Below, in pieces: positions 6,835-58,769 of a stretch of DNA of 64,000 bases; positions within the stretch are counted from its first letter, which is position 1, and each line of letters opens with the position of its first letter. The notes under the pieces were generated by a model that saw only the letters and a list, made by a program, of their open reading frames with translations, searched no databases and had not been told where the DNA came from. The stretch covers positions 269,116-333,115 of IMG/VR virus record IMGVR_UViG_3300032242_000723; one strand, 5' to 3'. Position numbers and translations under genes: made by a program.

Positions 6835-6842
6835 TATAAATA
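6835..6842 (+). promoter_or_regulatory. T4-type late promoter TATAAATA, 5 nt before ATG 6848
   Basis: TATAAATA-ttatc-ATG. Confidence 0.75.
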
Positions 6843-6847
6843 TTATC

Positions 6848-7543
6848 ATGAGCAACATTGACATCAACCAAACACTAGACCTAATCAAACTCAAGTTCTA
6901 CAACGAATATCTGTACACCGCCCACCTGTACGATGAAGGCGACAGTCCATTTCATAAAGAACTAACAGCACAAGTCGTAAAGACTTATGTAGACCCACTC
7001 AATCTTCCAAAAGATGCACATATTCTTGATCTTGGATGCGGCCCTGGCTACTTCTTAGACGAGATGAAGGAACGCGAGTACACTAACACTGTTGGTGTCA
7101 CACTCAGTCCAGGTGATATCAAGATTTGTGAAGACAAGGGACATGTGATCAAGAAGTATGATCTATCATTTCTTCCACAGAAGGATGGCTACTACGATGA
7201 GTCAGTAGACTTTATCTTCTTGCGTCATGCACTTGAGCATAGTCCGTATCCTATCTTCTCATTGATGGAATATAATCGTATCCTCAAGCAGGGATCAAAG
7301 ATTTACATTGAAGTTCCAGCCCCAGACTGTGAACGACAACATGAATCTAACCTGAATCACTATTCTATCTTAGGTTCTAATCAGTTGGGAGCACTATTAC
7401 AACGCTGTGGATTCAACATTGATGCGTTTAACAACTTAGAGTTTGATCTTCATATTCCAACCGAAGATGGTGAAACTAAGAAGGTTACTGAAAAGTATTA
7501 TTGCATAGTTGCCACGAAGGCTAAACCACTAGATGTAAAGTAA
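6848..7543 (+). CDS. class I SAM-dependent methyltransferase
   Basis: ILDLGCGPG motif I, DFIFLRHALEH, ILKQGSKIYIEVP. Confidence 0.88.
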   Translation: MSNIDINQTLDLIKLKFYNEYLYTAHLYDEGDSPFHKELTAQVVKTYVDPLNLPKDAHILDLGCGPGYFLDEMKEREYTNTVGVTLSPGDIKICEDKGHVIKKYDLSFLPQKDGYYDESVDFIFLRHALEHSPYPIFSLMEYNRILKQGSKIYIEVPAPDCERQHESNLNHYSILGSNQLGALLQRCGFNIDAFNNLEFDLHIPTEDGETKKVTEKYYCIVATKAKPLDVK

Positions 7544-7560
7544 GTTTTAAATATCGAGCA

Positions 7561-7600
7561 TAAATACTCTCACAACAGATACTTGTGAGAGTATTTTTTT
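7561..7600 (+). terminator. 14-bp perfect hairpin plus T-tract, overlapping a TAAATA late promoter
   Basis: aaatactctcacaa(7562-75)-cagatac-ttgtgagagtattt(7583-96) followed by Ts; TAAATA at 7561-66. Confidence 0.7.
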
Positions 7601-7612
7601 AAGGAAAAACCT

Positions 7613-7981
7613 ATGAAACCTAGTGAGATTCTGCGTAGTCTAGCAGATATGATTGACGCAAGACAACAAGCAATCAAGCCTTTAGGAGCAAGCGGCGCAT
7701 TGAATCCTAGATTGATGCCGCAAGTTATAGCAGAACCAGTAGATGTTGAGTTTGAGCCTGCGAATGGTCTTGCTCAACAACCTGATGATGTGTTTGTTCC
7801 TCCATTGCAGTTGAAGATTGAACTTCTCAAGAAATCACAGGGTGTGGAAAACATCTATGATGATCCTGAAGAGGAAGAAGATGAAGCCCATCATTATGAT
7901 GAGTTGGCTGCGATCAAGCGTAATGCAGGAATCGCCCCTATCGTGTTAGACGCATTAGACGACGACGAACCACTAGGATAA
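7613..7981 (+). CDS. hypothetical acidic protein
   Basis: 122-aa ORF with AAGGA RBS. Confidence 0.7.
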   Translation: MKPSEILRSLADMIDARQQAIKPLGASGALNPRLMPQVIAEPVDVEFEPANGLAQQPDDVFVPPLQLKIELLKKSQGVENIYDDPEEEEDEAHHYDELAAIKRNAGIAPIVLDALDDDEPLG

Positions 7982-7987
7982 CAAATT

Positions 7988-10549: not shown

Positions 10550-10550
10550 C

Positions 10551-10820
10551 ATGACAGACAATGCTGGTATCAATCTTGTTGTAAAGGGAAGTTGTAATCC
10601 CTTCGGTGGTTGCGGCGGCGGATGTTGCAAAGTTAGAGTGTACGAACCTGGAAATGTAAACTATCATTTAGAATGGTGCGAGTATTTTGATGAACCTACT
10701 CGTAAATGTAAAATATACGAAACTAGACCCGAGGGGTGCAGAACATACCCAACTGTAAGGCACATCCAACACGATATATGGTTAATACCAGGTTGTGGAT
10801 ATTACCTTGAAGAAGAATAA
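10551..10820 (+). CDS. YkgJ-like (CxxxCxxCC) cysteine-cluster, putative Fe-S protein
   Basis: CNPFGGCGGGCC ... CEYFD..TRKCKIYETRPEGCRTYP; ATG 10551. Confidence 0.7.
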   Translation: MTDNAGINLVVKGSCNPFGGCGGGCCKVRVYEPGNVNYHLEWCEYFDEPTRKCKIYETRPEGCRTYPTVRHIQHDIWLIPGCGYYLEEE

Positions 10821-10823
10821 ATA
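10818..10823 (+). promoter_or_regulatory. late promoter TAAATA, 5 nt before the terL ATG
   Basis: TAAATA-ctatc-ATG(10829), no SD. Confidence 0.7.
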
Positions 10824-10828
10824 CTATC

Positions 10829-12376
10829 ATGAGTAACGCACCTTCACTAATCAAAGACCCATATAAGAAAACAGTATTTAAAAATCAACAAGAACTAGAC
10901 GATTTCGTTAAATGTTGTGACCCGGCAACAGGTTATCTATATTTCATGGATAACTTCTTTATGATTCAACACCCTACTCGTGGCAGTATGAACTATCACC
11001 CCTGGGCATTCCAAGAACGATTGATTGAAACATATCACAAATATCGTTTTTCTATCTCACTGATGCCAAGACAGTCTGGTAAATCAACAAGTGCAGCCGG
11101 ATACTTGCTTTGGTATGCAATGTTCAATCCGGACTCAACGATATTAATCGCAGCACACAAATATACAGGTGCTCAGGAAATCATGCAGCGTATTCGTTAT
11201 GCGTATGAAAACTGCCCAGATCATATCAAGGCTGGTGTCACAACCTATAACAAGGGTTCTATTGACTTTGAAAACGGTTCGCGTATCGTATCTGCTACAA
11301 CGACTGAGAACACTGGTCGTGGTATGTCAATCACCTTATTATATCTTGACGAGTTCGCATTCGTTAGACCTTCAATCGCTAAAGAGTTCTGGACAGCAAT
11401 CACTCCTACTCTGTCAACAGGAGGTAAAGCCATTATCACATCAACACCAAACTCAGATGAAGATCAGTTCGCACTCATATGGAAAGGTGCTAACAAGACA
11501 GAAGACGAGTTCGGCAATACTACTGATATAGGCGTAAACGGATTTAGAGCATATAGAGCATACTGGAGAGAACAGCCGGGCCGCGACGACAAATGGGCTG
11601 CTGAACTCCGTGCTCAACTCGGGGATGATCGCTTTCGCAGAGAGATGGATTGCGATTTTATCATCGCAGACGAGACGCTTATCAATCCAAACACGTTACT
11701 ACTGTTAGACGGCATCGAACCTGTTTCTCGTATGGGACAAATACGCTGGTACCAACAACCTGTCAAGGGAAATATATACGCAGTTGGTCTTGATCCTTCA
11801 TTAGGTACAGGTGGCGATCCATCTGCGATACAGATATATGAAGCAAATACAACCACACAGATTGGTGAATGGAAGCATAATAAGACTGACATTCCTAGCC
11901 AGATCAAGTTGATTGCTGAAGTTTGTAGGCACATAGAATCCATCACGAAAGAACCAAACAACATCTATTACTCTATTGAGAGCAATGGTATCGGTGAAGC
12001 GGCTATCATATCATTAAACGAGTTCGGTGAATCAAACATCCCAGGAACCTTCTTGAGTGAGAGCGGCAAAAAGCGTAAGGGCTTTAACACAACAAACAAG
12101 GTCAAGATCGCCGCGTGTGCTAAGTTCAAAACATTGCTAGAATCAAAGAAAATGACAGTCAATAGCCGTCCATTGATCAGCGAACTTAAAGCATTTGTCG
12201 CATCTGGTGGCAGTTATGCAGCCAAAATCGGTGACACGGATGATTTGGTAATGGCCTCACTATTAGCGGTTAGAATGATGACTCAACTCGCAGAGTATCA
12301 TGGTGACTTAGAATCTCAAATCAGAGATCATAGTGAGTTCATTGAGCCATTACCCTTCTTTGCGGTACTCGGATAA
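10829..12376 (+). CDS. terL: terminase large subunit (T4 gp17-like)
   Basis: PRQSGKS Walker A, LLYLDEFAF Walker B, TSTPN, GLDPSLG and DDLVMA nuclease motifs. Confidence 0.95.
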   Translation: MSNAPSLIKDPYKKTVFKNQQELDDFVKCCDPATGYLYFMDNFFMIQHPTRGSMNYHPWAFQERLIETYHKYRFSISLMPRQSGKSTSAAGYLLWYAMFNPDSTILIAAHKYTGAQEIMQRIRYAYENCPDHIKAGVTTYNKGSIDFENGSRIVSATTTENTGRGMSITLLYLDEFAFVRPSIAKEFWTAITPTLSTGGKAIITSTPNSDEDQFALIWKGANKTEDEFGNTTDIGVNGFRAYRAYWREQPGRDDKWAAELRAQLGDDRFRREMDCDFIIADETLINPNTLLLLDGIEPVSRMGQIRWYQQPVKGNIYAVGLDPSLGTGGDPSAIQIYEANTTTQIGEWKHNKTDIPSQIKLIAEVCRHIESITKEPNNIYYSIESNGIGEAAIISLNEFGESNIPGTFLSESGKKRKGFNTTNKVKIAACAKFKTLLESKKMTVNSRPLISELKAFVASGGSYAAKIGDTDDLVMASLLAVRMMTQLAEYHGDLESQIRDHSEFIEPLPFFAVLG

Positions 12377-12402
12377 GATTGCACAGACTATTTCACATTT
12401 AG

Positions 12403-12410
12403 TATAAATA
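12403..12410 (+). promoter_or_regulatory. late promoter TATAAATA, 5 nt before ATG 12416
   Basis: TATAAATA-gtatc-ATG. Confidence 0.75.
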
Positions 12411-12415
12411 GTATC

Positions 12416-14407
12416 ATGGCACTAGAAAACAAATCATTCAATGTAAAACTTTATAAACTTTTGAAATCTAAAGGTTATGAACCAGTTCCTTTGGACTCAA
12501 AGAACAAAAGAGTTCAAGCATCACAAGAAGCTGATGTTATTGAGTTCACTTTCAAAAAAGAAGGTGAAGATTATGGCAAAGCTTGGGTAAGTATCGACGA
12601 TGCTCAACGGGTCATAGTATATTACGACGATGAGCAAGAAAACAGTCCAAGCGAAGTAACTCCAGGTGTTGATTACGATGATACTTGGACAGGTTTCTTG
12701 ACCCACTTAAAGAACTGGTCAATGCGTAAGCAACTTGATTTTGAATTAGCCAACAAAGACCGCTTAGGCGATGACATGAGACAACGGGATTATCATAAGA
12801 TGAAAGAAAAAGTATCAGAAGGCTATCACGCTATGGGCAGAGCAAAAAGTTATAATGACAATGTACCAGATGTAAAGATCGTCCTTCAACATAGCCGTAA
12901 TATCGAAGAAGGTGAACAACGCTATCGTAACGTAGCGAAAATCTATCTTGAAAACTCAGACGGCGAGCGTATCCTTGCACCTACTAACAAGCCAGGCGTA
13001 GCACAGATTTATGCACGTCACTTAGCAGAAGGTGGACAACCTCATGATGAACGTTGGAATCACTTGAAGGGTCTTTGCGAAGAATATAACAAGATGGCTG
13101 GATTTGTCCGTGCTACCCGCAATGGTGAGTTCACTGAGTCCGCACAAAAACTCGTACAAGAAGGTATCAATCACTATAATAAGTTACGTGAATCACTTAG
13201 CAAGATGCGTGGTTCGCGTGGCTACAACGCATACTTTGAATCATGGTCACCTCCTCTCATGGAAGATGAGAGTGATGACACGATCAATGAACTATTCGTC
13301 CAGGAAACAATGGATCCTCGTATCGAGTCGGTTATGCCAATCCTCTCACGCCTTCGCAAGAATGTAGTAGAGATGAATGAAGTTGGTATGCTTGAAAGCT
13401 GGGCTGACAATGTTATCAATGAGAAGCTGGAACTTGGCGAATATAACGATCATGAAATGGCTGACACAAAAACTGACATGAGAAAAACAGGTGATGAAGT
13501 CACATCAGAGCATGACGAAGCCTATGCAAAGTTAAAGAGAATGGCACCCGAACTCTATAACTTCATTCGTAACGAAGCTCCGATGCCGATTGATCCGATC
13601 CAAACATTACAATATCTTCGCCAATCAGGTGGAAATGCAGGACAACTATTACGTATGCTTAAGGATCACATCAAGCAAGATACCGAAAAGCAATACGACA
13701 AAAAGCATCCATCCTTAGCAGAAAGCATGAAGCGTTTCTTAGAGACACTCGTGAATGAAGGACTCAAAGATACAGGTTGGATGGACAAGGACGAAGCCGA
13801 GGACGGCACGGTTCCTGCATTCATGCGTAAGAAGCAATATGACGACAAGATGAAGGACGCTACGGGCGGCCCTGCAGTTCGTACTGCAAAGAACAAGCCT
13901 GAAGACGAAATTGACGAAAACTTCATCAGCATGGACGCACAAGCCGTAGCAGAAGAAGATGATGCAGGTCAACTCAAAGGTGGCCCAATCGAAGCCTATG
14001 GTGTACATGGCGTGAAGTCTAAGCAATGGCGCAAGACATTTAAAAGTCAAGCTGCGTTTGAAAAATGGTTAGACAAAAATGAAGGCAACGTTGAAGTTTA
14101 TGGCACTCGTGACCTAGATGAAAGCCTAGACGAATCTAGTTATCCTTGGTTAGATCATAATGATCGTCCTGCAAACAAAAGAGACAAATCGCGTGATTCA
14201 GAAGAAGCATTGCGTAAAGAAGTCTCGCGTAAACAGGAAAAGAAGGTTGAAGAAGATTTAGATGCTAACCAAAAGCGTGTAGGTCAACTTGGTCCTACAG
14301 AAAAGGTCAAGAACAATAACATCGGTAAACTAGTAGGTGCCAACGAAAGCACTGAGTATGATGAAGAATTGGCAAGAATAATGGATATTGCCCGTTTTAA
14401 AAGATAA
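12416..14407 (+). CDS. large late protein, candidate protease-processed internal head protein
   Basis: 663 aa; acidic C-terminal half with many (V/I/L)xE sites; late promoter. Confidence 0.6.
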   Translation: MALENKSFNVKLYKLLKSKGYEPVPLDSKNKRVQASQEADVIEFTFKKEGEDYGKAWVSIDDAQRVIVYYDDEQENSPSEVTPGVDYDDTWTGFLTHLKNWSMRKQLDFELANKDRLGDDMRQRDYHKMKEKVSEGYHAMGRAKSYNDNVPDVKIVLQHSRNIEEGEQRYRNVAKIYLENSDGERILAPTNKPGVAQIYARHLAEGGQPHDERWNHLKGLCEEYNKMAGFVRATRNGEFTESAQKLVQEGINHYNKLRESLSKMRGSRGYNAYFESWSPPLMEDESDDTINELFVQETMDPRIESVMPILSRLRKNVVEMNEVGMLESWADNVINEKLELGEYNDHEMADTKTDMRKTGDEVTSEHDEAYAKLKRMAPELYNFIRNEAPMPIDPIQTLQYLRQSGGNAGQLLRMLKDHIKQDTEKQYDKKHPSLAESMKRFLETLVNEGLKDTGWMDKDEAEDGTVPAFMRKKQYDDKMKDATGGPAVRTAKNKPEDEIDENFISMDAQAVAEEDDAGQLKGGPIEAYGVHGVKSKQWRKTFKSQAAFEKWLDKNEGNVEVYGTRDLDESLDESSYPWLDHNDRPANKRDKSRDSEEALRKEVSRKQEKKVEEDLDANQKRVGQLGPTEKVKNNNIGKLVGANESTEYDEELARIMDIARFKR

Positions 14408-14442
14408 CGCAATAAAGTATTATATTACTTACCCATTACTGG

Positions 14443-35160: not shown

Positions 35161-35246
35161 AACATATTGTCAAAACCGACTTTTTTTATTCCTAGCATAA
35201 ATATATTCATGAGTCAATGAACTCACTTTTTTGAAGGAATAACAAA

Positions 35247-35660
35247 ATGACACAATTTACACGTACACATGGTGACTATCAACCAGTACAGAATATGGAC
35301 TCACCAGCTTATACAGTTGGTGCGATCAACGCTGTTACTTCTGCTGCTACTGTTCAACCACAAGGTCCAAAGCTCGACTACTTCACTATCACTGCTTCGG
35401 GTTCAACTGCTTTCAGCACAACTCAAGTAAACGTAATGATTCAAACTATCCAGCAAAAGGCAACTATCTACATCTACGAGTTCACAACTGCTGGTCCTGA
35501 TACTCTTGCAGTTGCTGTTTACCCAACTGGTGTATGGGCTCCTGTTGATGCGACTTACGGTGCAAACGCAAACGTTGTTGCAGCAATCAATACAGCACTT
35601 ACTGCTGCTTCAGTTGCTAATACTACTACTGGTACAGCTTCAGCTACCTTCACTAACTAA
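35247..35660 (+). CDS. putative abundant virion protein
   Basis: T/A-rich 137 aa, TAAATA 35198, AAGGA RBS, own terminator. Confidence 0.65.
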   Translation: MTQFTRTHGDYQPVQNMDSPAYTVGAINAVTSAATVQPQGPKLDYFTITASGSTAFSTTQVNVMIQTIQQKATIYIYEFTTAGPDTLAVAVYPTGVWAPVDATYGANANVVAAINTALTAASVANTTTGTASATFTN

Positions 35661-35721: not shown

Positions 35722-35727
35722 TAAATA
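35722..35727 (+). promoter_or_regulatory. late promoter TAAATA, 5 nt before ATG 35733
   Basis: TAAATA-cttgc-ATG. Confidence 0.7.
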
Positions 35728-35732
35728 CTTGC

Positions 35733-36176
35733 ATGTCACACCGCATCTGCTGCTATACCTTATTCAATATCACTCATACTGGTGTGTTAAACAGGTCAAG
35801 GCCTAATGAAGATAATGTAAATGAATGGTTACGTAAACGCAATACACAATGTAACTTTGATACAGTACTACAAGCAATATCATTGCGGTCACAGCCCGAA
35901 GTTGTTAAGGTGCCGATAAGAATAGAAATGCAAGAAGCTGACTTTATAAAGTTTGGTTTTTTGTATAGTAAAGAAGACAAGATTAGTTACTATTGGAAGT
36001 TTGAGTTTGAAGTACAACATGCAAGTGTGTTTGAGAACGGAATCATTCCATTAGGAGCGTTATACAATGATTGCAACGGTATTCCAATGATACTATGCGA
36101 AGATCAACTTACTATGCTGTCCAACTTCTTAGATACATCATCTGAGTTAAAGAACATTCACTTTGAGGTAACATGA
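35733..36176 (+). CDS. hypothetical protein
   Basis: 147-aa ORF. Confidence 0.7.
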   Translation: MSHRICCYTLFNITHTGVLNRSRPNEDNVNEWLRKRNTQCNFDTVLQAISLRSQPEVVKVPIRIEMQEADFIKFGFLYSKEDKISYYWKFEFEVQHASVFENGIIPLGALYNDCNGIPMILCEDQLTMLSNFLDTSSELKNIHFEVT

Positions 36177-41342: not shown

Positions 41343-41449
41343 AAAACGCTCCTGTTTGATAAATAGATTCATACGCTCTCGCTCGGAGAGTTTATGCAGT
41401 TTAACCCACTGCGTAGCAAGTAGACCTTGCACCAAACAGGAGAAAACAA

Positions 41450-42817
41450 ATGGGTCGTCCTCTAAAAATCGCAAAAGCACAAGCCGTGCTTACTATCACT
41501 GATACCAATACAAATGGTACTGTGACTGTCACACAAAATCTAACTACTGAACCAACCGTTGGCGTAGCTGAATGGATGAAGTTCACTGTAGCAACTACAG
41601 TCGGTGGTCTAACCGCAGGTCAAACTTACTACATTCTTGCTATTACTGGTAATAACACATTCACTGTCTCATCAACACAAAAAAGCGTTCAACCACAAGT
41701 TAGCCCAACATTATCTACTACTACAGGTGGTTCTGTTAGTGCAACTGTTAACGCTGTTGACATGTACTTCAACAATCCAGATGGTGGCACTGGTTATCCA
41801 GCAACTAACGCAAATACTTATTCAGTAGTCGGTGGTAACACTGCACTTTATGGTAAGCAAGTTCTTTGTAACGTAGCATTCGGTGTCAATGGAACTGGTA
41901 CTGTATTTGCTAATGCAAGTAGCAACATCGTAGTTGGTCTTGGTACTGACTTCGCGAATCTTGCAACTGGTACAATACTATTTTCAACTGGTACGGACGG
42001 CACCGTGACTCTTCTCGGTACAGGCACTGCAACTAAGGGCAATCTAACAGTTGCACTAGCTAACTCTGCTGCAAACGGTACTATCGGTACTTCAGGAAAT
42101 GCACAGACACTATCAGTCAACACTCCGGTTGTATTTAACAGCACATTCGGTGGCAACATCACGTCTGGTACTACTTATTATGTTAAGGCTATCGCTAACG
42201 CAGCCGCATTCACTGTATCAACTACAGTTGGTGGTGCAACTTTAGCATTGAGTGCAAACGCTTCTGTAACTGGTAATGCGATTCAAAATCGTGTTGTTCT
42301 TGGTGCTGTATCTTCAAACGATGCTAGTGCAAATGCATTTGTTCAAGCACTTCCAGAAGCAGGCTATATTGTCCGTCAAAAGGGCAAGACAAAGTATCTC
42401 GTAACTGGCACAACAACGGCTATTACTGGTGCGGTTTATACTGCTAACGTCGCAAACACTGCGTTGACACCAAACACAATGTCAATCATTGCAACTAACG
42501 CGGCATCTGGTACACAGTATATTTCAAGCGTGAATGATCATAGTTCACAACTATTCCCAGCAACTGTTGCTCCTGGTTCATTAGTAACTGGTACTGTATA
42601 TACAATCTACAGTGCAGGTACTACCAACTGGACATCAGTTGGTGCAGCCGCAAACATCACTGGTGTCACATTCGCTGCTACTGGTACTGCTTCTGGTACA
42701 GGTTTAGCAGTGTTGAGTACTGTTAACCCGGATGTTATTTCTTCATTCAACACAGCCGCTGTTGCGAATGCTGCAAATGGTCAGCCAAACCCAATCGTCA
42801 CTATCAACAACGCATAA
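41450..42817 (+). CDS. putative virion structural protein
   Basis: T/A/G/N-rich 455 aa; TAAATA 41360, AGGAG RBS. Confidence 0.65.
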   Translation: MGRPLKIAKAQAVLTITDTNTNGTVTVTQNLTTEPTVGVAEWMKFTVATTVGGLTAGQTYYILAITGNNTFTVSSTQKSVQPQVSPTLSTTTGGSVSATVNAVDMYFNNPDGGTGYPATNANTYSVVGGNTALYGKQVLCNVAFGVNGTGTVFANASSNIVVGLGTDFANLATGTILFSTGTDGTVTLLGTGTATKGNLTVALANSAANGTIGTSGNAQTLSVNTPVVFNSTFGGNITSGTTYYVKAIANAAAFTVSTTVGGATLALSANASVTGNAIQNRVVLGAVSSNDASANAFVQALPEAGYIVRQKGKTKYLVTGTTTAITGAVYTANVANTALTPNTMSIIATNAASGTQYISSVNDHSSQLFPATVAPGSLVTGTVYTIYSAGTTNWTSVGAAANITGVTFAATGTASGTGLAVLSTVNPDVISSFNTAAVANAANGQPNPIVTINNA

Positions 42818-44944: not shown

Positions 44945-46666
44945 TTATACTACTGGAGGCAATGTATCTGGCTTCGGAGATAACACAGATGATAGTGGTT
45001 GAAGCTGCGGTACTGCTGTTCCACTGCTATTTAGATAGATTTCCTTATCGTTATTTATAAAGCTATTCATCTGCGACTGGTTAGCGACAGAATTGAATCC
45101 AGTTTGTGTTCTAACCTTCTCAGAGATACGAACCCACATCTTGCCGTCCCAACGATATAATATCTGCGGAAGATAATCAATGCGTAAGAAGTAATCTCCA
45201 ACTTGCGGACTTGCAGGGAAAGCAATACCAGCACCAGTTGGGAAACCATTTGGAGCTTGTCCATCACCAGTAGCATATCCAGTAGAGTAACCAAATGATC
45301 TTGGGCTTGAGCGAGCGATAAACTGATATCCAGGAATACAGTCTGCACGATAGTCCATGTTGATCGTGACATCACCAACAAATCCAGGCTGTGTTGGGTC
45401 TTGGTCTGCTGTTGCATAAGTGTTATCTGCTGTACCATAAGGACCAACGATCATACCTAATGATTGAACTGCTAATATCTTTGTCGTTTCAACTGAACCT
45501 GAGCCACCATCTGTTCTTTGCGGAGCCTGTTCAATGATAGACAACTGAGTTTGCATAAACTTGTCAATCTTCTCATTGATGCCAACCGAGTCAACTGTCA
45601 TATCCCAGATGCTTGATAGAGCCTGTTTGCTGATCTTGATTCCCGCTGCTGGATTTCTATAGCGTGGGTCACGAATCATTACAACCGAACCAGTAGCAGA
45701 TGGAGTAGATGCATATGGATTGCTATTGATACCAATAGGAGGTGCAGGCTGATTATACTTTTTAGACAGAACATTGTTTGATTCATACTCACCATATGTA
45801 GGTACGATATACAACTTGCTCGTATCGTATCCAGATTGTGGAAGTAATCGTTCTGCTTCAGTAAGAGCGGCGTTATTGACCGCGATATTCTTATTATATG
45901 TTGACAAGATGTCAGCAAGACTACCATTATCAACTGCTACCCAGTATGTCATATTAGGTGGAGTAGTACCAACTGGTACCTCTATAAGTGATTCATAGAT
46001 TTTGCCACCATAGTTGACTGTGTAGCCGGGTGGATATGTCTTGTTAGGATCAAAGTCACCAAGATAGTTGTCTTGTTCAACTGGTGCGTTGAGGATGTCA
46101 CCGAACTCTTCACTGTTAACAAGTGGTTCGCACTTGATACGCCATAGATGAGGATACCATGTTTGAGTAAACCCTTCACTCGCATAGTTAGAATCAGTGA
46201 TCTGGTAGAAACGCTTTAATGCTGTTGGTAGTTTTTCATCTAGTGGATTGTAATCAAGCAAGTGAGGTAACTCAAGCACATCGCCAACCATTAACTTACG
46301 ACCAATGATGTCAATCATGTCGTTATAGTGAACTACGATAAAGATGATATCATTGTTTAGAAATAGACCAAACTGACTTAGGTCGAAATCAAGGTTTTGA
46401 ACGGAGTAGTGGCCTCTGAGTCTGTATATATTCTCATCATACTTACGGTCTCTGTTTTCAAGAAACAATAAATCCTGAATCTGAGTAGGATCGGGTTCTA
46501 AATATTGCGGCTGCGTAGCGTCAATAGATGGCCCTTGATTTGTTACGCCCGCATACTTGTGGATATACAAATCGGTGCCGCCGACCGTCAGCATCTCTGA
46601 GATCGTGCGATCTAGGAATCTGTAGTCGTCTTGCTTATTGGGTCTGTAAAGTGATAAACGAGGCAT
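44945..46666 (-). CDS. neck/head-closure protein (T4 gp14-like) with insertions
   Basis: ISEMLTVGGTDLYIHKY, LFLENRDRKYD, DLSQFGLFL, GDVLELP; ATG 46666 preceded by TAAATA-N5. Confidence 0.6.
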   Translation of the reverse strand: MPRLSLYRPNKQDDYRFLDRTISEMLTVGGTDLYIHKYAGVTNQGPSIDATQPQYLEPDPTQIQDLLFLENRDRKYDENIYRLRGHYSVQNLDFDLSQFGLFLNNDIIFIVVHYNDMIDIIGRKLMVGDVLELPHLLDYNPLDEKLPTALKRFYQITDSNYASEGFTQTWYPHLWRIKCEPLVNSEEFGDILNAPVEQDNYLGDFDPNKTYPPGYTVNYGGKIYESLIEVPVGTTPPNMTYWVAVDNGSLADILSTYNKNIAVNNAALTEAERLLPQSGYDTSKLYIVPTYGEYESNNVLSKKYNQPAPPIGINSNPYASTPSATGSVVMIRDPRYRNPAAGIKISKQALSSIWDMTVDSVGINEKIDKFMQTQLSIIEQAPQRTDGGSGSVETTKILAVQSLGMIVGPYGTADNTYATADQDPTQPGFVGDVTINMDYRADCIPGYQFIARSSPRSFGYSTGYATGDGQAPNGFPTGAGIAFPASPQVGDYFLRIDYLPQILYRWDGKMWVRISEKVRTQTGFNSVANQSQMNSFINNDKEIYLNSSGTAVPQLQPLSSVLSPKPDTLPPVV

Positions 46667-46671
46667 ATCTT

Positions 46672-46677
46672 TATTTA
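46672..46677 (-). promoter_or_regulatory. late promoter TAAATA (minus strand), 5 nt before ATG 46666
   Basis: Reverse complement reads gaTAAATA-aagat-ATG. Confidence 0.7.
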
Positions 46678-48943: not shown

Positions 48944-48987
48944 TAGTCAGTGCGTTTCCTGATAAATAACATTGACAGGAAACGCAC

Positions 48988-49773
48988 ATGACCGCAAACA
49001 TTTTATCAACACCAACTAATCTCAACCTTGAAGAAATCAAAGAAGCATTCTTTGAGAATGTCCGTCTACGATTGGGCGGTGGCATCATTGACCTTGAGTT
49101 AGATCCAGAGCACTATGAAGCAGCATATAACTATGCTATCAAGGTCTACAGACAACGTGCTCAGAACGCGACACAAGAGACGTATACTTTGATGACAGTT
49201 ATCAAGAATGTTGACACATACACGCTTCCTAGCGACTTTATCAATGTACGCTCACTGTTTAGACGCACAGTAGGTCTTGAGACTGGTCCAGGTGCATCGT
49301 CGTTTGACCCATTCTCAAGTGCGATTCTCAACACCTATCTGTTGAACTACAATGCATCGGGCGGACTTGCGACATATGACTTCTACGCTGGCTATGTTGA
49401 GTTAGCAGCACGAATGTTCGGTGGATATGTAACATATACATTTGATCCCGTTACCAAGGTATTGCGTGTTGTAAGAGACTTTAAGAGCACTGGTGAGAAG
49501 ATACTTATCTGGGCTGACATTCAACGACCTGAAGTGGTATTGCTTCAAGATCCAGGTGCTGGTGTTTGGATTGCTGACTTTGTGATCGCGATTCTAAAGG
49601 GCATCATTGGTGAAGCTCGTGAGAAGTTTGGAACCATCGCAGGTCCAGGTGGCGGCACATCATTGAACGGTACAGCGATGAAAGCAGAGTCAAAGGCTAT
49701 GCAGGAAGCACTGCTTCTTGATCTCAAGAACTATGTGGACCTATCGCAACCCCTGACATGGATTCAAGGTTGA
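48988..49773 (+). CDS. neck/head-to-tail adaptor (T4 gp13-like)
   Basis: VRLRLGGGIIDLELDPEHYEAAYNYAI resembles gp13 N-terminus; GEAREKF..GPGGGTSLNG; TAAATA 48963. Confidence 0.75.
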   Translation: MTANILSTPTNLNLEEIKEAFFENVRLRLGGGIIDLELDPEHYEAAYNYAIKVYRQRAQNATQETYTLMTVIKNVDTYTLPSDFINVRSLFRRTVGLETGPGASSFDPFSSAILNTYLLNYNASGGLATYDFYAGYVELAARMFGGYVTYTFDPVTKVLRVVRDFKSTGEKILIWADIQRPEVVLLQDPGAGVWIADFVIAILKGIIGEAREKFGTIAGPGGGTSLNGTAMKAESKAMQEALLLDLKNYVDLSQPLTWIQG

Positions 49774-49810
49774 TTTAACCTGGATTCACGGATAAGGACT
49801 AAATACAAGT

Positions 49811-50647
49811 ATGAAAAACATACTTGAAACCCTGATCGCCAGCGACACTAGTTACAACAAGTCAGTGACACGCTATCTTTATAAGACTGACCCAGTATTA
49901 TGGAGTCAGGTGGTAGAGGCTACTTCCTTCTTACCGGATGACGCTAAACCGAAACAACGAGTTTGGCACATTCTTAATGATAGATATGATATAGAAACTT
50001 GCCCGATTACTCAGGAACCACTTCGCTGGAATGAGAAGGATTATCGCAGGTTCTCATCTTTTGATGCTAAGAAAAAGGGCATCGGACAGATAATCAGTAA
50101 GGCAACTACCGGAAATCACTGGCGACAAAAGGATACCAAAAAGTCCGAAACAGCGAATACAAAGTTCTCTGAAGGCTTTCGCGACGGCAAACATAAACCT
50201 TGGGAAGACCGTAACAGAGATTATAAATCAAGTTTGGCGGCGGCAAGAAAAACTTGGATGGAAAAGTATGGAGTAGACAATCCATCTAAACATCCTTCTA
50301 TAAAACAAAAACTGTCGGACAAAAACAAAGAGTGGCAGGCACTGAATCCAAAAGACAGAACTCTTATGGAAGAATATTACATTGCGGTTAGGTTGGTTAC
50401 TAATAGAAACTGGTACGAACATTTTTATACCATTAACCCTGAACGACTACAAAGAAGCAGGGACCTGCATCTTGATCATATATACAGTATAGCAGAAGGT
50501 TTTGTCAATAATATCCCTCCCGAAATCATCGGTCACTGGACCAATCTAAGGTTGTTACCTAAGTTGGAAAACTCAAGTAAGGGTGCAGGTTGCCACAAAA
50601 CTAAAGAACAACTTTATGAAGACTACAGCAAAGAGGCACAAGGCTAA
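49811..50647 (+). CDS. putative HNH-type homing endonuclease
   Basis: EKYGVDNPSK module; LHLDHIYSI...HWTNLRLLPKLENSSKG; TAAATA-caagt-ATG. Confidence 0.65.
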   Translation: MKNILETLIASDTSYNKSVTRYLYKTDPVLWSQVVEATSFLPDDAKPKQRVWHILNDRYDIETCPITQEPLRWNEKDYRRFSSFDAKKKGIGQIISKATTGNHWRQKDTKKSETANTKFSEGFRDGKHKPWEDRNRDYKSSLAAARKTWMEKYGVDNPSKHPSIKQKLSDKNKEWQALNPKDRTLMEEYYIAVRLVTNRNWYEHFYTINPERLQRSRDLHLDHIYSIAEGFVNNIPPEIIGHWTNLRLLPKLENSSKGAGCHKTKEQLYEDYSKEAQG

Positions 50648-50804: not shown

Positions 50805-50807
50805 CGC

Positions 50808-50836: not shown

Positions 50837-50842
50837 ACAAGA

Positions 50843-51475: not shown

Positions 51476-51811
51476 ATCGCCACGCTTCCACTTCACGTCT
51501 TTTCTCTTTACAACTTCCACACAGTTGAGGCATATTGTCCTTAGGTTGGTCAATGCTGCATTAAGCAAACTGCCATCAATATGAAACACTACCATCTGAG
51601 TAGGATATAGACACTTAAAGCCACATAGGTCACATGTGGCTTTTTTCTTGTATCCAGATTTTTCCCAAGTAGCCATATTTGCTTTAGTCTTGGGCTTCTT
51701 TTTCCCACAGCCGTCACATATACTACGATAATGAGTAACGCCATCACGCTTATAGTTGATGGCGCAATAACTCTTATTGCAAGTCTTACATATCGGTCTT
51801 TTCAGTGCCAT
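51458..51811 (-). CDS. Zn-binding HNH-like protein
   Basis: CxxC pairs; VFHIDGSLLNAALTNLRTICLNC; reverse TATAAATA 4 nt before ATG. Confidence 0.6.
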   Translation of the reverse strand: MALKRPICKTCNKSYCAINYKRDGVTHYRSICDGCGKKKPKTKANMATWEKSGYKKKATCDLCGFKCLYPTQMVVFHIDGSLLNAALTNLRTICLNCVEVVKRKDVKWKRGDLTIDY

Positions 51812-51961
51812 CTTGTATTTATATTCCTGCCTTCGAAGGTTCAGGTAACCACCAGATAACCACGGTTTTTTTAATTTAATAATAAATAGATATTAGAAAC
51901 ATGCAACCACAACGCATGTGACAGGTAGTAAACCTCATAATTTTACAAAGGGAAAAACATT

Positions 51962-55534: not shown

Positions 55535-55599
55535 TAACTTTAGGGTGAGTGCTAAACACTCACCCTAAATGATAAATATACATAACAGGAGAATATAAA

Positions 55600-56247
55600 A
55601 TGGCAACAGCCTCTCAATCACTATTCAACATGACCGTAGCATCTGATAATGCTGGTGGAAACCAAGGTCTGTTGATGCCTAAATTACAGTTTCGATTCAG
55701 AGTTAACTTTCTGAATTTCGGAGTTGGTTCTACATCCGGTCTTTCTTTGACTAAGCAGGTTATGGAAGTTTCTCGCCCTGCAGTTACCTTTGCACCAATT
55801 ACACTTAACGTTTATAATTCAACTCTCAAGCTTGCAGGTAAGCACACTTGGGCAGATATGACTTGTAAGATTCGTGACGATGCGTCAGGTAGCGTTGCTA
55901 AAGCAGTTGGCGGTCAACTACAAAAGCAAATGGACTTTGTTGAACAAGCAACTTCGGCTGCTGGTCAAGACTATAAGTTCCAAACTAACATTGAAATTTT
56001 AGACGGTGGTAATGGTACTGCTGCTCCGGTCGTACTTGAGACTTGGGAAGTATACGGTTGCTTCTTGCAGGGTGTTAACTACGATGCACTGAACTACGCA
56101 ACAAGTGACGCAGTAACAATGAGTCTTACTATTTCATACGATAATGCAATTCAAGGACCTCTTGGCTCTGGTGTAGGATCACCTATTACTCGTGTTGCAA
56201 ATGGTTCAACTGGTTCCGTAACTGGTATCGGTGGAACAACAGCTTAA
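55600..56247 (+). CDS. tail tube protein (T4 gp19-like)
   Basis: Follows sheath; KLQFRFRV, AGKHTW..IRDD, WEVYGCF, LTISYD; AGGAG RBS. Confidence 0.85.
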   Translation: MATASQSLFNMTVASDNAGGNQGLLMPKLQFRFRVNFLNFGVGSTSGLSLTKQVMEVSRPAVTFAPITLNVYNSTLKLAGKHTWADMTCKIRDDASGSVAKAVGGQLQKQMDFVEQATSAAGQDYKFQTNIEILDGGNGTAAPVVLETWEVYGCFLQGVNYDALNYATSDAVTMSLTISYDNAIQGPLGSGVGSPITRVANGSTGSVTGIGGTTA

Positions 56248-56267
56248 TATAAGGTTAAATAGTTCGT

Positions 56268-57458
56268 ATGTCGGGCTTTAATCAGAATTTATTTAATGAG
56301 ATTGCCGGAGCATTTGGTTCCGGCAATCCCTACCTTAGAGATTATCACCACGCCTCTAAAGTGTTTAGAACGAATAATTATCAGAGAGCACCTAAACTTA
56401 AATTTCTCTTTCATACTTATTTCGAAGTCAATACTGATGTTGCTGGTGCAAATTATGGCTTGCTCGTGAAAGAAGTAAAGCTTCCTACATATACCTTCAA
56501 CACTGTACAACTTAATCAATATAACAGAAAAAGAATTGTACAGACTAAAATCAAGTACGATCCTATTGATATCACGTTTCATGACGATAATGCAAGTCAG
56601 GCAACTCAGTTATGGGAACTTTACTATCAATATTATTACAGCGATTCTAAAAAACCAGGATCAGTTCTACAGGGTTCAAAAGGCAGCAAACAAGCAACCG
56701 GATCTGGTGACTACAATAGTAGAAATATATATTCCGGCGATAACATAAACGGCGACACATCTTGGGGCTTCCAAGGGGACAAAAAACCTCCCTTCTTCAA
56801 GAATATTACTGTATTCGGCATGCATCAACATGAATTTACGGCGTATACACTAATCAATCCTATAATCACTGGCTTTTCACATGACACCTATAACCATAGT
56901 GAAGGTGCCGGCACAATGACAAATCGTATGACAATTGATTATGAAACAGTGGTATATAACTATGGTAGCATAGATGGTAGAAATCCTCAAAACATAATCA
57001 CAGGATTCGGAGATATCGCTAACTATGACAGAGAGCTTAGTCCGATAGCAATGCCGGACTCAAATAAATTTGTATCAGGAAAAGGTGGTTTGATAGATGC
57101 AGCGGGAGGGTTCGTTCGCTCACTAGAAGAAGGAAACCCAGTAGGCGCAATCATGGCTGCGGGTGATATTTATAATACTTTTGCGAATCCAAATCTTAAG
57201 GTAGCAATTCCTGCTACATTAAATTCATTGTTAGTAACTGCTGGACAAAATGCCCCTACAAATCGTAATACTAGGTTTAATACACCAGTCGCTGCTGCAA
57301 GTCCGGGACCAAATGGATTACCGAACGGACTTCCGATTGATGCGTTGACTAAACCACCGAACCCTGTATTCACTACTCCTAATGCAGGTGATCAGTATGC
57401 AGGCCCGCCAGGAGTTTTCACTGGATTTCCTCCGGTACCTCCATTCCCTAGAAATTAA
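56268..57458 (+). CDS. tail-tube-fold/baseplate tube initiator-like protein
   Basis: VKLPTYTFNT..NQYNRKR..KYDPIDITFHDD; TAAATA at 56256. Confidence 0.6.
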   Translation: MSGFNQNLFNEIAGAFGSGNPYLRDYHHASKVFRTNNYQRAPKLKFLFHTYFEVNTDVAGANYGLLVKEVKLPTYTFNTVQLNQYNRKRIVQTKIKYDPIDITFHDDNASQATQLWELYYQYYYSDSKKPGSVLQGSKGSKQATGSGDYNSRNIYSGDNINGDTSWGFQGDKKPPFFKNITVFGMHQHEFTAYTLINPIITGFSHDTYNHSEGAGTMTNRMTIDYETVVYNYGSIDGRNPQNIITGFGDIANYDRELSPIAMPDSNKFVSGKGGLIDAAGGFVRSLEEGNPVGAIMAAGDIYNTFANPNLKVAIPATLNSLLVTAGQNAPTNRNTRFNTPVAAASPGPNGLPNGLPIDALTKPPNPVFTTPNAGDQYAGPPGVFTGFPPVPPFPRN

Positions 57459-57476
57459 TCTAAGATAAATAGTATC

Positions 57477-57833
57477 ATGGCAACTTCACAATACAATTCA
57501 GTAGACCAAACCGTAGCTATCTTTGATGGCTTTTACAACCTTAATCTCAACGTAAGTGCTACAGAATATGATGTAGTATATTCATACTTCAAAGGTGTGT
57601 CAGAAAATACCACTATTGCAGGAAACTTTACCGTAGTTCTGTTCAGAATTGCAAATGACGGTAACTATAATGTACTAGATTTACTAGCAATCATTAAAGG
57701 GCAATCCAACAAACTACAAATGAATAAAGTTCTTTGCTATTATCTGAACACCTTTAAGGCAAAAGCGTCATTATACGGTGTCAGTAACGTACCTAAACCA
57801 AATCAAGTAGTACAACGTAACGTAGTGCTATAA
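57477..57833 (+). CDS. hypothetical late protein
   Basis: TAAATA-gtatc-ATG. Confidence 0.7.
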   Translation: MATSQYNSVDQTVAIFDGFYNLNLNVSATEYDVVYSYFKGVSENTTIAGNFTVVLFRIANDGNYNVLDLLAIIKGQSNKLQMNKVLCYYLNTFKAKASLYGVSNVPKPNQVVQRNVVL

Positions 57834-57834
57834 A

Positions 57835-58269
57835 ATGGGTAAATGGGCACAAGGTTTCTACACCCCAAAGAATGCAGAAAAGTATATTGGTAAACGCACT
57901 CCTAGATATCGTTCTGGTTGGGAACTTACTTTCATGAACTTTTGTGATAACAATGACAATGTATTATATTGGGCCAGTGAATCTATGGTTGTTCCCTATC
58001 AGCATCCCTTTACCGGCAAACCAACTAACTATATCCCTGATTTCTTTGTAGTATACGAGAATAAGTCTGGCAAAAAGATTGCTGAAGTTGTTGAAATCAA
58101 ACCAAAGAAGCAAAGTCTAATAGAAAGTAGAGTTGCAACCGCAAAAGATAGAATGGTTGTAGCAATCAATCATGCTAAGTGGCGTGCAGCCACTGTATAT
58201 TGCAAAGCCCATGGTTTCGCCTTTCGCGTAATTACGGAAGATGACTTGTTCTACAATGGACGCAAGTAA
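57835..58269 (+). CDS. head completion nuclease (T4 gp4-like, TnsA-type fold)
   Basis: YRSGWELTFMNFCD, WASE, YIPDF, VEIKP, NHAKW. Confidence 0.85.
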   Translation: MGKWAQGFYTPKNAEKYIGKRTPRYRSGWELTFMNFCDNNDNVLYWASESMVVPYQHPFTGKPTNYIPDFFVVYENKSGKKIAEVVEIKPKKQSLIESRVATAKDRMVVAINHAKWRAATVYCKAHGFAFRVITEDDLFYNGRK

Positions 58270-58283
58270 AACTAAATACTTCT

Positions 58284-58769
58284 ATGAGCAAAAAATTAGA
58301 AGAACTTTTCGATATGGAATCCAGTGTGACAAACGATCTCACTATTCCATTGCCTAACTTTGAACAAGATGTAACAGAGACGGCACTTACAACACTAGAC
58401 AAGATTGAAGCAGCCTTACCACAAGTCAGGGGATTAGAAGCCGCTGACAATGAGATGGACGAACTTGCTATGCTTGCAACCAATAGTTACAAGGACCTAA
58501 TGGATCTTGGGCTGCAGGTTGAAGCACGATTCAGTTCTGAAATATTCAACTCAGCCAGTAGTATGCTTGGTCATGCTATCACTGCAAAGACAGCTAAGCT
58601 AAACGCCAAATTAAAGCGAATTGATATGCAGTTAAAAAAAGCACAACTAGATATGAAACTTGCTTCTAAAAGCGAAGAGATAGAGGCAATACAGATTGGC
58701 GAAGGCCAATCATTGGATCGCAATGAGTTACTTAAGATATTGATGAATAAAAATAATACAGATCAATGA
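58284..58769 (+). CDS. putative terminase small subunit
   Basis: All-helical 161 aa; DLMDLG..EIFNSASSML..KRIDMQLKK resembles the TerS pattern recalled for T4-like marine phages; TAAATA-cttct-ATG. Confidence 0.4.
   Translation: MSKKLEELFDMESSVTNDLTIPLPNFEQDVTETALTTLDKIEAALPQVRGLEAADNEMDELAMLATNSYKDLMDLGLQVEARFSSEIFNSASSMLGHAITAKTAKLNAKLKRIDMQLKKAQLDMKLASKSEEIEAIQIGEGQSLDRNELLKILMNKNNTDQ

What the first reader, a model, noticed from the sequence alone, without database searches (positions are those of the whole stretch)
6835..58284. Late genes with TAAATA exactly 5 nt before ATG: probable leaderless late mRNAs
Seen: TAAATA-N5-ATG with no Shine-Dalgarno at 6848, 10829 (terL), 12416, 35733, 46666 (minus), 49811, 57477 and 58284; N6 at 56268 and N4 at 51811 (minus). 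Other late genes have TAAATA plus a normal SD leader (5467, 35247, 41450, 48988, 55600). Known: T4 late transcripts start a few nt downstream of TATAAATA. Inference: +1 falls on the A of AUG, giving a two-tier late translation programme of leaderless versus SD-led genes.
Basis: partly seen in the sequence, partly recalled or inferred. Interest (0 to 1): 0.72.

Follow-up and report, generated by a model that had tools for sequence, protein, structure and literature searches.

The report
Late promoters fused to start codons
In this uncultured 333-kb freshwater jumbo phage, about 30 late genes have the T4-type late promoter box (A)TAAATA 4-6 bases before a ribosome-site-less ATG, so their mRNAs probably start at the start codon, but no RNA data exist to confirm it.

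Summary
TAAATA-N5-ATG occurs 9 times in the window against 1.0 expected. In the whole 333-kb genome it occurs 31 times, against 6 in the reversed control and 6.5±3 in simulations. The TAAATA-to-ATG spacing peaks sharply at N5, and 23 of the 31 N5 sites open ORFs of at least 60 codons.

These starts lack a Shine-Dalgarno (SD) site, although the other genes use a clear AAGGA site. They are almost always ATG. The base before the ATG is a pyrimidine in 20 of 21 cases, which is the usual signature of a transcription start. Their first 40 nt fold weakly. Ten head divergent transcription units.

The genome encodes a gp55-like late sigma factor. T4's published geometry places the box at -13 to -6, which puts +1 on the A of the ATG.

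The arrangement is conserved gene by gene in uncultured aquatic relatives: terL in 66 of 69 distinct upstream contexts and the next virion gene in 60 of 60, reaching orthologues of 45% identity. It is not enriched in T4, four other T4-like phages or four cultured jumbo relatives.

Predicted leaderless genes include terL, endolysin, homing endonucleases and virion proteins that are probably minor. Major capsid, sheath and tube genes are SD-led.

No RNA runs were listed, so the start sites remain inferred. I rate it a new variant of a known kind.

The parts
6835..6850 (+). TATAAATA-N5-ATG unit. The start belongs to a 231-aa methyltransferase-like gene (6848-7543).
   Evidence: No SD. Orthologues in relatives are mostly SD-led, so this looks like a recent gain.
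10817..10831 (+). ATAAATA-N5-ATG unit at the start of terL (10829-12376).
   Evidence: The PA5oct alignment starts at residue 1. 66 of 69 distinct upstream contexts in relatives have TAAATA-N4-6-ATG.
12403..12418 (+). TATAAATA-N5-ATG unit at the start of a 663-aa virion structural protein (12416-14407).
   Evidence: The arrangement is kept in 60 of 60 distinct contexts in relatives. Among more distant orthologues of 45-86% identity, 18 of 20 keep it.
35198..35211 (+). TAAATA-N5-ATG opening only a 3-codon ORF. It probably acts as the late promoter of the SD-led gene 35247-35660, giving a leader of about 38 nt.
35722..35735 (+). CTAAATA-N5-ATG unit directly after a terminator-like hairpin and T-run. 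The start belongs to a 147-aa ORF (35733-36176).
   Evidence: The 80 nt upstream fold at -27.4 kcal/mol and contain a T-run.
46664..46677 (-). ATAAATA-N5-ATG unit. The start (ATG 46666) belongs to a 573-aa virion structural protein and heads a leftward transcription unit.
   Evidence: The phrog_11591 match starts at residue 3. The upstream neighbour is on the opposite strand.
49800..49813 (+). CTAAATA-N5-ATG unit. The start belongs to a 278-aa homing-endonuclease-like gene (49811-50647).
51809..51823 (-). TATAAATA-N4-ATG unit. The start (ATG 51811) belongs to a lone minus-strand HNH endonuclease gene of 117 aa.
56256..56270 (+). TAAATA-N6-ATG unit. The start belongs to a 396-aa tail-tube-like gene (56268-57458).
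57466..57479 (+). ATAAATA-N5-ATG unit. The start belongs to a 118-aa ORF (57477-57833).
58273..58286 (+). CTAAATA-N5-ATG unit. The start belongs to a 161-aa ORF (58284-58769).
5438..5469 (+). SD-led late unit: TAAATA, a 23-nt spacer with a weak SD, then ATG 5467 (baseplate or fibre-like gene).
48963..48990 (+). SD-led late unit: gATAAATA, a 19-nt spacer with AGGAA, then ATG 48988 (head-tail adaptor).
55573..55602 (+). SD-led late unit: gATAAATA, a 21-nt spacer with AGGAG, then ATG 55600 (tail tube).
41360..41452 (+). TAAATA followed by an 84-nt structured leader that matches Rfam RF02980 (freshwater-2 RNA, 41375-41452). The leader ends in AGGAG-N8-ATG 41450.
58769..58840 (+). Homing-endonuclease 5'UTR cassette: ATAAATA, then a conserved stem-loop leader, then an SD, then ATG 58838 of an HNH endonuclease (58838-59608). 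This is the source of the N3 'TAAATAaagATG' matches.
   Evidence: No Rfam match.

Best explanation
(A/C/T)TAAATA is the -10-like core of this phage's late promoters, read by host RNA polymerase carrying the phage's gp55-family sigma factor.

The box precedes gene starts in two arrangements. In roughly 40-45 genes it lies about 16-35 nt (occasionally more) upstream of the start, giving a short leader that carries an AAGGA-type SD site. In about 26-31 genes, roughly 8-9% of genes, it lies 4-6 nt (mode 5) upstream of an ATG. Transcription then starts at, or within about 1 nt of, the A of the AUG. The resulting mRNA has no leader and must be translated by SD-independent initiation that depends on the 5'-terminal AUG.

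Shown here: the motif, its spacing, the lack of an SD site, the presence of the sigma gene, and the conservation across relatives. Inferred: the exact +1 position, which is borrowed from T4 geometry, and leaderless translation itself.

A further and weaker inference concerns which genes fall in each class. The leaderless class holds terL, endolysin, homing endonucleases and other virion proteins. The major capsid, sheath and main tube genes are SD-led. This suggests the split helps set protein yield or timing.
For: Enrichment and the sharp N5 peak.

Features of the starts:
- It is the first start codon of the ORF in 17 of 26 called genes, and anti-SD pairing is negligible, while the rest of the genome uses AAGGA at -14 to -10.
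- A gp55-like sigma factor is encoded (phrog_12791 at 6e-72, phrog_234 at 9e-21; T4 gp55 tblastn 2e-5).
- T4's box lies at -13 to -6 (PMC1524935).
- Both classes share the same flanks (A at -1, G at -2, C at +1 of the box) and show no -35 element.
- A occupies the predicted +1 in 29 of 45 SD-led late promoters, p = 2e-6.
- The base at -1 is a pyrimidine in 20/21 starts against 33/74 for SD-led genes, p = 3e-5. In relatives it is 78/80 against 60/119.
- The start codon is ATG in 30/32 cases in the genome. In relatives it is 182/188, against 133/170 for SD-adjacent starts.
- The first 40 nt fold less stably, -2.0 against -3.4 kcal/mol, p = 0.002.
- Ten of 31 genes head divergent units. One divergent pair has its two start codons only 40 bp apart, each preceded by TAAATA-N4.
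- A terminator abuts the box at 35733 and upstream of terL in many relatives.

Conservation: the start type is kept per gene. terL is 66/69 leaderless-type, the next virion gene 60/60, and g14570 is SD-led in 38/38. The arrangement persists in orthologues of 45-55% identity. A complete 524-kb relative has 45 sites against 12 in its control.

Functions are late-type.

Precedent: a -10 box a few nucleotides (6-8 nt in M. tuberculosis) from the start codon is an accepted predictor of leaderless transcription and has been checked against dRNA-seq (PMC6028130).
Against: - No transcript 5' ends are available. No RNA run was listed, and the phage is an uncultured metagenome assembly.
- The +1 rule comes from T4. 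This phage's sigma is 297 aa against 185 aa in T4, so its geometry could differ.
- gp33 and gp45 homologues were not detected.
- Many of these genes sit 7-40 nt after a same-strand gene, so read-through transcripts would also carry them.
- Spacing varies from N4 to N8 in relatives, so some mRNAs would carry 1-3-nt leaders.
- The host is unknown, so its ability to translate leaderless mRNA is unknown.
- No phage-encoded S21, IF3 or S1 was found.
- My gene calls are crude, and the relatives are not phylogenetically independent, so p-values from them are optimistic.
Confidence: 0.72

Rival explanations
1. The promoters are real, but the adjacent cistrons are translated mainly from long read-through late transcripts, by termination-reinitiation or other SD-independent internal initiation. 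On this view the promoter-ATG adjacency is a by-product of genome compaction, not a device for making leaderless mRNA.
For: About two thirds of these genes lie 0-115 nt downstream of a same-strand gene, and many lie within 7-40 nt. At terL, the upstream ORF's stop codon is the TAA of the box.
Against: Ten of 31 genes head divergent units where coupling is impossible, and others follow terminators. Compaction alone does not explain a 1-nt-sharp spacing peak, the pyrimidine at -1, the near-exclusive ATG or the weakly folded 5' ends. Nor does it explain conservation over deep divergence while the flanking sequence turns over.
Confidence: 0.12
2. (A)TAAATA at -11 to -6 acts on the mRNA as a non-SD, AU-rich ribosome-recruiting element, for example through S1 binding, and not as a promoter in these positions.
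For: AU-rich enhancers upstream of start codons are known from general knowledge. The motif sits where an SD site would sit.
Against: The identical extended motif occurs at variable distance (16-35 nt or more) upstream of genes that have their own SD site. That fits a promoter and not a ribosome site. The motif matches the late box of T4-type phages, and a gp55-like sigma is encoded. The pyrimidine at -1 with a purine at +1 is a transcription-start feature, not a translation feature.
Confidence: 0.07
3. The boxes are promoters, but this sigma's geometry differs from T4's. The +1 would fall several nucleotides inside the ORF or upstream of it, and the true start codons would lie elsewhere.
For: The sigma is 297 aa, with an N-terminal part that T4 gp55 lacks. 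Spacing in relatives ranges from N4 to N8.
Against: Protein homology starts at residues 1-3 of the proposed starts for terL and the 46666 gene. Alternative starts are far away and have weak SD sites. A is enriched at the T4-predicted +1 in SD-led promoters.
Confidence: 0.06
4. The pattern is a chance or compositional artefact of an AT-rich genome.
For: About 6 sites are expected by chance genome-wide, and 8 of the 31 N5 sites do open ORFs shorter than 60 codons.
Against: 31 observed against 6.5±3 expected, and no shuffle of the window reached its count. 23 of the 31 open real ORFs. The arrangement is conserved per gene in relatives. It is not enriched in nine comparably AT-rich phages.
Confidence: 0.01

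Closest known systems
T4-type late promoters (TATAAATA, gp55 sigma) and the NATAAATA / CTAAATA variants of T4-like phages
   Same: Same core box with a variable first base, no -35 element, a phage gp55-family sigma, and placement upstream of structural and lysis genes. The published box-to-+1 geometry of -13 to -6 is the basis of the inference (PMC1524935).
   Different: In T4, S-PM2, Syn9, KVP40 and Aeh1 the box is not enriched at N5 from ATG: 10/5, 5/3, 3/3, 2/2 and 1/2 sites against the reversed control. In T4, from general knowledge, late mRNAs carry SD leaders. gp33 and gp45 homologues were not detected here.
Predicted ATAAATA late promoters of Rak2-like jumbo phages (CBB, GAP32) and relatives PA5oct, Phosso and Vibrio 2.275.O
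   Same: These are the nearest cultured relatives (terL 42-49% identity). The same ATAAATA motif was predicted before structural genes in CBB and GAP32 (PMC5259590). In PA5oct a TAAATA box lies between terL and the next virion gene, as it does here.
   Different: In those phages the box is followed by a leader of about 20-30 nt, usually carrying an SD-like site, and TAAATA-N5-ATG is not enriched (15/12, 5/8, 3/2 and 3/3). Fusion of the box to the ATG is specific to the uncultured aquatic clade of this window.
Thermus phage phiYS40 leaderless middle and late mRNAs
   Same: A lytic phage whose later genes are expressed largely from leaderless mRNAs. This is the precedent for a temporal leaderless programme (review PMC3594737).
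   Different: According to the review read here, most middle and late transcripts of phiYS40 are leaderless and IF2/IF3 levels change on infection. From recall, since the primary paper was not held, its promoters are read by the host polymerase, and its host phylum commonly uses leaderless mRNA (PMC12340547). Here only about a third of late promoters are of this type, the promoter is gp55-type, the phage clearly also uses SD sites, and the host is unknown.
Bacterial genomes with a -10 box at a fixed short distance from start codons (GeneMarkS-2 group C; Mycobacterium, Deinococcus)
   Same: The same sequence signature: a promoter box a few nucleotides upstream of the start in place of an SD site, mixed with SD-led genes. 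It has been checked against dRNA-seq in those organisms (PMC6028130).
   Different: Those are sigma-70-type Pribnow boxes in cellular genomes. Here the box is a phage late-sigma box at 4-6 nt, in a virus.

Membership tests
T4-type (gp55-dependent) late promoter | TATAAATA-like box of about 8 bp with no conserved -35 element | tested here: met
   The consensus is g-A-TAAATA-c. Positions -30 to -3 show no conservation in either class. The full TATAAATA occurs at only a minority of sites.
T4-type (gp55-dependent) late promoter | A phage-encoded gp55-family sigma factor | tested here: met
   A 297-aa ORF at genome position about 192.5-193.4 kb (-) matches phrog_12791 at 6e-72 and phrog_234 at 9e-21, and T4 gp55 at 2e-5. 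It has no Pfam hit.
T4-type (gp55-dependent) late promoter | gp33 co-activator and gp45 sliding-clamp activator | tested here: inconclusive
   PF09116, PF02916 and the Syn9 gp33 protein gave no match. These proteins are small or divergent, so a miss is weak evidence.
T4-type (gp55-dependent) late promoter | Located upstream of late genes (virion, packaging, lysis) | tested here: met
   The genes behind the box include terL, tail tube, sheath region, adaptor, virion proteins and endolysin.
T4-type (gp55-dependent) late promoter | Transcription starts 6 nt after the box and only late in infection | not testable with these tools
   No RNA runs were listed. Indirect support: A is enriched at the sixth position in SD-led promoters.
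Leaderless mRNA | The primary 5' end coincides with the start codon (5'UTR of 0 to a few nt) | not testable with these tools
   No RNA data. No metagenome contig began at the ATG.
Leaderless mRNA | A promoter -10-type box at a fixed short distance from the start codon, replacing the SD site | tested here: met
   The spacing peaks at N5, with N4 and N6 as shoulders. There is no SD site. The criterion is taken from PMC6028130.
Leaderless mRNA | AUG, and not GUG or UUG, as the 5'-terminal start codon | tested here: met
   ATG in 30/32 cases in the genome. In relatives 182/188, against 133/170 at SD-adjacent starts.
phiYS40-type phage leaderless programme | Most middle and late transcripts are leaderless, with host IF2/IF3 remodelling | tested here: not met
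   Only about 25 of about 86 genes with a TAAATA box within 80 nt upstream are of this type. IF3, S21 and S1 are not phage-encoded. Host factor levels cannot be tested.

The most novel reading that the evidence does not exclude
A large clade of aquatic jumbo phages runs a deliberate dual initiation programme. A fixed set of late genes (packaging, lysis, homing endonucleases, probably minor virion proteins) is expressed only as leaderless mRNAs from gp55-type promoters. This would let the phage uncouple those genes from SD-dependent initiation, for example by remodelling ribosomes or initiation factors late in infection, or by setting strict low stoichiometry. It would be a translational control layer not described for T4-like late transcription.
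Probability: 0.2. Interest if true: 0.8.

Novelty: new variant of a known kind. Interest (0 to 1): 0.6.

Why it matters
- **Late transcription and translation.** T4-type late transcription is a textbook system, and its mRNAs are considered SD-led. A widespread uncultured clade that fuses the late box to the start codon of conserved genes would show that gp55-type promoters can generate leaderless mRNAs. It would also show that phages outside Thermus and the actinobacteria use leaderless translation for part of the late programme.
- **Gene calling.** Start calling in jumbo-phage metagenome assemblies would improve, because SD-based callers will misplace these starts.
- **Orphan RNA motif.** The Rfam motif freshwater-2 gains a context as a late-gene leader.
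- **Testable predictions.** The work gives precise +1 positions, reporter constructs and predictions for metatranscriptome read starts.

Tried and rejected
- **RNA evidence.** Two run searches found only DNA metagenome runs and listed no RNA run.
- **Metagenome contigs.** I scanned for contigs beginning exactly at the ATG, as possible transcript assemblies. None did, but the scan gave deeper orthologues.
- **Near-identical cultured phage.** A megablast search with 6 kb of the window found none.
- **Phage-encoded translation factors.** S21, IF3_C and S1 gave no hits.
- **gp45 and gp33.** No hits; inconclusive.
- **Host inference.** terL relatives are binned into MAGs of Chitinophaga (84%), Haliscomenobacter (75%), Aquiluna (68%), Methylophilaceae (58%) and others. 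These are inconsistent and binning is unreliable, so the host stays unknown. A pattern search over those whole MAGs was uninformative.
- **N3 peak.** I considered it as a second leaderless class and rejected that. It is the homing-endonuclease 5'UTR cassette plus the antisense of ATT-TAT codons.
- **Endonuclease stem-loop as a +1 calibrator.** Not clean. The stem may extend 3-4 nt upstream of the predicted +1 in invariant sequence.
- **Literature.** No held paper links gp55-type promoters with leaderless mRNAs. The PA5oct omics paper reports only sigma-70-like promoters. The phiYS40 primary paper is not held.

Full report
**What the window is.** The window is the last 64 kb of a single 333,115-bp virus contig with 41% GC and a CheckV completeness estimate of 92%. 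DNA runs holding it are freshwater and aquatic metagenomes, and no cultured phage matches it at the DNA level. Its large terminase is 48-49% identical to those of Pseudomonas phage PA5oct and Sinorhizobium phage Phosso, and 42% identical to Cronobacter phage GAP32. It is therefore an uncultured jumbo myovirus distantly related to the Rak2/PA5oct group. The window carries terL, tail sheath, tail tube, adaptor, baseplate or fibre-like genes and several virion-protein genes.

**Checking the observation.** All the listed sites exist. In the window TAAATA-N5-ATG occurs 9 times against 1.0 expected, and none of 100 shuffles reached 9. In the genome it occurs 31 times, against 6 in the reversed control and 6.5±3.0 in Markov simulations.

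The spacing histogram from TAAATA to ATG has a sharp maximum at N5. There are 31 such sites, and 23 of them open ORFs of at least 60 codons. N4 gives 10 sites (7 long ORFs) and N6 gives 8 (2 long ORFs). A broad second group lies at about 16-35 nt.

A spurious N3 peak of 25 sites has a different cause. Part of it is a repeated homing-endonuclease leader that happens to begin 'aagATGTAGTT'. The rest is the antisense of ATG-TGT-ATT-TAT codons.

**Are these true starts without an SD site?** Using a crude codon-usage gene call of 326 genes covering 86% of the genome, 26 genes have TAAATA-N4-6-ATG among their candidate starts. In 17 of them it is the first start codon of the ORF. A pattern scan that did not depend on these gene calls raises the count to 31.

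Predicted pairing to the anti-SD sequence is mostly between -2 and +1.6 kcal/mol at these starts. The median is -4.15 for all first starts and -1.5 for internal ATGs. The other genes show a textbook SD signal: AGGA occurs in 104 of 244 upstream regions, and G is enriched at -11 to -8. The phage and its host therefore do use SD sites, and this class stands apart.

Protein homology begins at residues 1-3 of the proposed starts for terL and for the 46666 gene.

**Is TAAATA the late promoter?** Five points support this.
- The genome encodes a 297-aa gp55-family late sigma factor.
- The same extended consensus, g-A-TAAATA-c, with no -35 element, precedes both the ATG-adjacent starts and 45 SD-led genes.
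- The genes behind it are late-type: terL, endolysin, tail tube, adaptor, virion proteins and homing endonucleases.
- ATAAATA was already predicted as the late promoter in the related phages CBB and GAP32 (PMC5259590).
- T4-like phages are known to vary the first base of the box, giving NATAAATA or CTAAATA (PMC1524935).

**Where would transcription start?** In T4 the box occupies -13 to -6 (PMC1524935). A 5-nt spacer therefore puts +1 on the A of the ATG.

Several internal features agree with a transcription start at that position.
- The base before the ATG is C or T in 20 of 21 N5 starts, against 33 of 74 SD-led starts (p = 3e-5). In relatives the figures are 78/80 against 60/119.
- In SD-led late promoters, where no ATG constrains the sequence, the sixth base after the box is A in 29 of 45 cases (p = 2e-6).
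- Box-adjacent starts are ATG in 30 of 32 cases in the genome. In relatives the figure is 182 of 188, against 133 of 170 for SD-adjacent starts. Leaderless translation is known to need a 5'-terminal AUG.
- The first 40 nt of these ORFs fold less stably than those of SD-led genes, -2.0 against -3.4 kcal/mol (p = 0.002).
- Ten of the 31 genes have an opposite-strand upstream neighbour. One divergent pair has its two start codons 40 bp apart, each with TAAATA-N4.
- At 35733, and upstream of terL in many relatives, a terminator hairpin and T-run abut the box. Read-through from upstream cannot easily supply these genes.

**Comparative evidence.** IMG/VR holds at least 80 loci with terL 81-86% identical to the window's. 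Upstream of terL the sequence differs completely between lineages, with different upstream genes and with or without terminators. Nevertheless (A/C/T)TAAATA followed by 5 or 6 nt and ATG is almost invariant.

Counting only distinct upstream contexts, the start type is a stable property of each gene:
- terL is box-adjacent in 66 of 69.
- The following virion gene is box-adjacent in 60 of 60.
- g14570 is SD-led in 38 of 38.
- g15862 is SD-led in 24 of 33.
- The methyltransferase-like g6848 is SD-led in most relatives, so its box-adjacent start in this genome is a recent change.

Across 935 kb of relatives' loci, long-ORF starts after TAAATA number 48, 97, 42, 12 and 26 at N4 to N8. Reversed controls give none. 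A complete 524-kb relative has 45 N5 sites against 12 in its control. Orthologues of the post-terL virion gene at only 45-55% identity still show the arrangement; overall 18 of 20 distant orthologues do.

By contrast, TAAATA-N5-ATG is not enriched in T4, S-PM2, Syn9, KVP40 or Aeh1. It is also not enriched in PA5oct, GAP32, Phosso or Vibrio phage 2.275.O. In the jumbo relatives the box tends to sit 20-30 nt upstream of the start, usually with an SD-like site between them. In PA5oct this includes the same terL-to-next-gene junction. The fusion of box and start codon is therefore a derived and conserved trait of one uncultured aquatic clade. These relatives share ancestry, so statistics computed on them overstate independence.

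**Which genes use which mode.** The box-adjacent class holds terL, endolysin, at least five HNH or homing endonucleases, a kinase-like gene, a 2OG-oxygenase-like gene, several virion structural proteins, a second tube-like protein and several unknowns. The major capsid gene has AGGAG-N9-ATG and no box within 110 nt. The main tube and the adaptor have SD sites behind a box. The sheath has only a weak SD-like AAGGG, and its nearest box is 73 nt upstream. This fits, but does not prove, the idea that leaderless starts are used for proteins needed in small amounts.

**Limits.**
- No RNA run was listed, so no 5' end has been seen.
- The +1 rule is imported from T4, and this phage's sigma is larger than T4's.
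- gp33 and gp45 were not detected.
- Many of these genes lie just downstream of same-strand genes, so read-through transcripts carrying them internally probably also exist.
- The host is unknown. MAG co-binning gives inconsistent taxa.
- No phage S21, IF3 or S1 was found.

**Comparison with what is known.**
- A -10 box at a fixed short distance from start codons is the accepted genomic signature of leaderless transcription in Mycobacterium and Deinococcus (PMC6028130; PMC12340547).
- Thermus phage phiYS40 is a precedent for leaderless middle and late phage mRNAs (PMC3594737).
- phiKZ early transcripts (no leaderless transcript detected) and AR9 transcripts (5'UTRs of 26-491 nt) all carry leaders.
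- I found no paper in the held library that links gp55-type late promoters with leaderless mRNAs.

I therefore rate this a new variant of a known kind. My confidence is about 0.9 that the box is the late promoter and about 0.7 that these mRNAs are leaderless or nearly so. It is about 0.4 that the split between the two classes has regulatory meaning.

Noticed in passing
window 41375-41452 (+): Rfam RF02980 'freshwater-2 RNA', an orphan cis-regulatory candidate from metagenomes, matches at 56.7 bits against a gathering score of 49.9. It has three hairpins and ends in AGGAG-N8-ATG 41450. It lies 4 nt downstream of the +1 predicted from the TAAATA at 41360. This places the motif as the 5' leader of a jumbo-phage late gene, a 455-aa ORF with no PHROG hit.
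   Followed up: partly
window 58769-58840 (+), and nine more copies in the genome (ATGTAG at genome positions 13334, 21307, 27972, 34966, 39853, 74763, 76914, 81559 and 268102, all on the minus strand): A conserved cassette of about 70 nt. It consists of ATAAATA, then a stem (GTAGTT...AACTAC) enclosing a variable inner hairpin with compensatory changes, then TCTAAYGCT, an AAGGAG-type SD and the ATG. It precedes homing endonucleases of different families, both HNH (MCIYCG...) and GIY-YIG-like (MTIY...). This suggests a shared mobile late-expression leader. There is no Rfam match.
   Followed up: partly
genome 68818-68863 (outside the window): A divergent gene pair, a 2OG-oxygenase-like gene on the minus strand and a 327-aa ORF on the plus strand. 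Their start codons are 40 bp apart, and each is preceded by AATAAATA-N4. This is a back-to-back pair of predicted leaderless late promoters.
   Followed up: partly
window 35198-35249 (+): TAAATA-N5-ATG opens a 3-codon mini-ORF (ATG AGT CAA TGA). It is followed by an AAGGA SD and the real gene at 35247. It is either simply a promoter whose +1 happens to be an AUG, or a leaderless upstream mini-ORF.
   Followed up: no
L002:538-2301 (genome about 191.6-193.4 kb, minus strand): The gp55-like late sigma gene (297 aa, with about 110 extra N-terminal residues compared with T4 gp55 and no Pfam hit) lies immediately upstream of a GIY-YIG homing endonuclease gene.
   Followed up: partly
window 7548-7615 (+): Two TAAATA boxes, at 7548 and 7561. 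The second overlaps the 5' arm of a terminator-like hairpin and T-run that lies just before the AAGGA SD of gene 7613. It could be a combined terminator and late-promoter junction.
   Followed up: no
L112-L117: terL relatives sit on contigs binned into MAGs of unrelated taxa: Chitinophaga, Haliscomenobacter (a 183-kb contig), Aquiluna, Methylophilaceae and an archaeon. These are probably phage contigs mis-binned into bacterial genomes in the GTDB species set.
   Followed up: no
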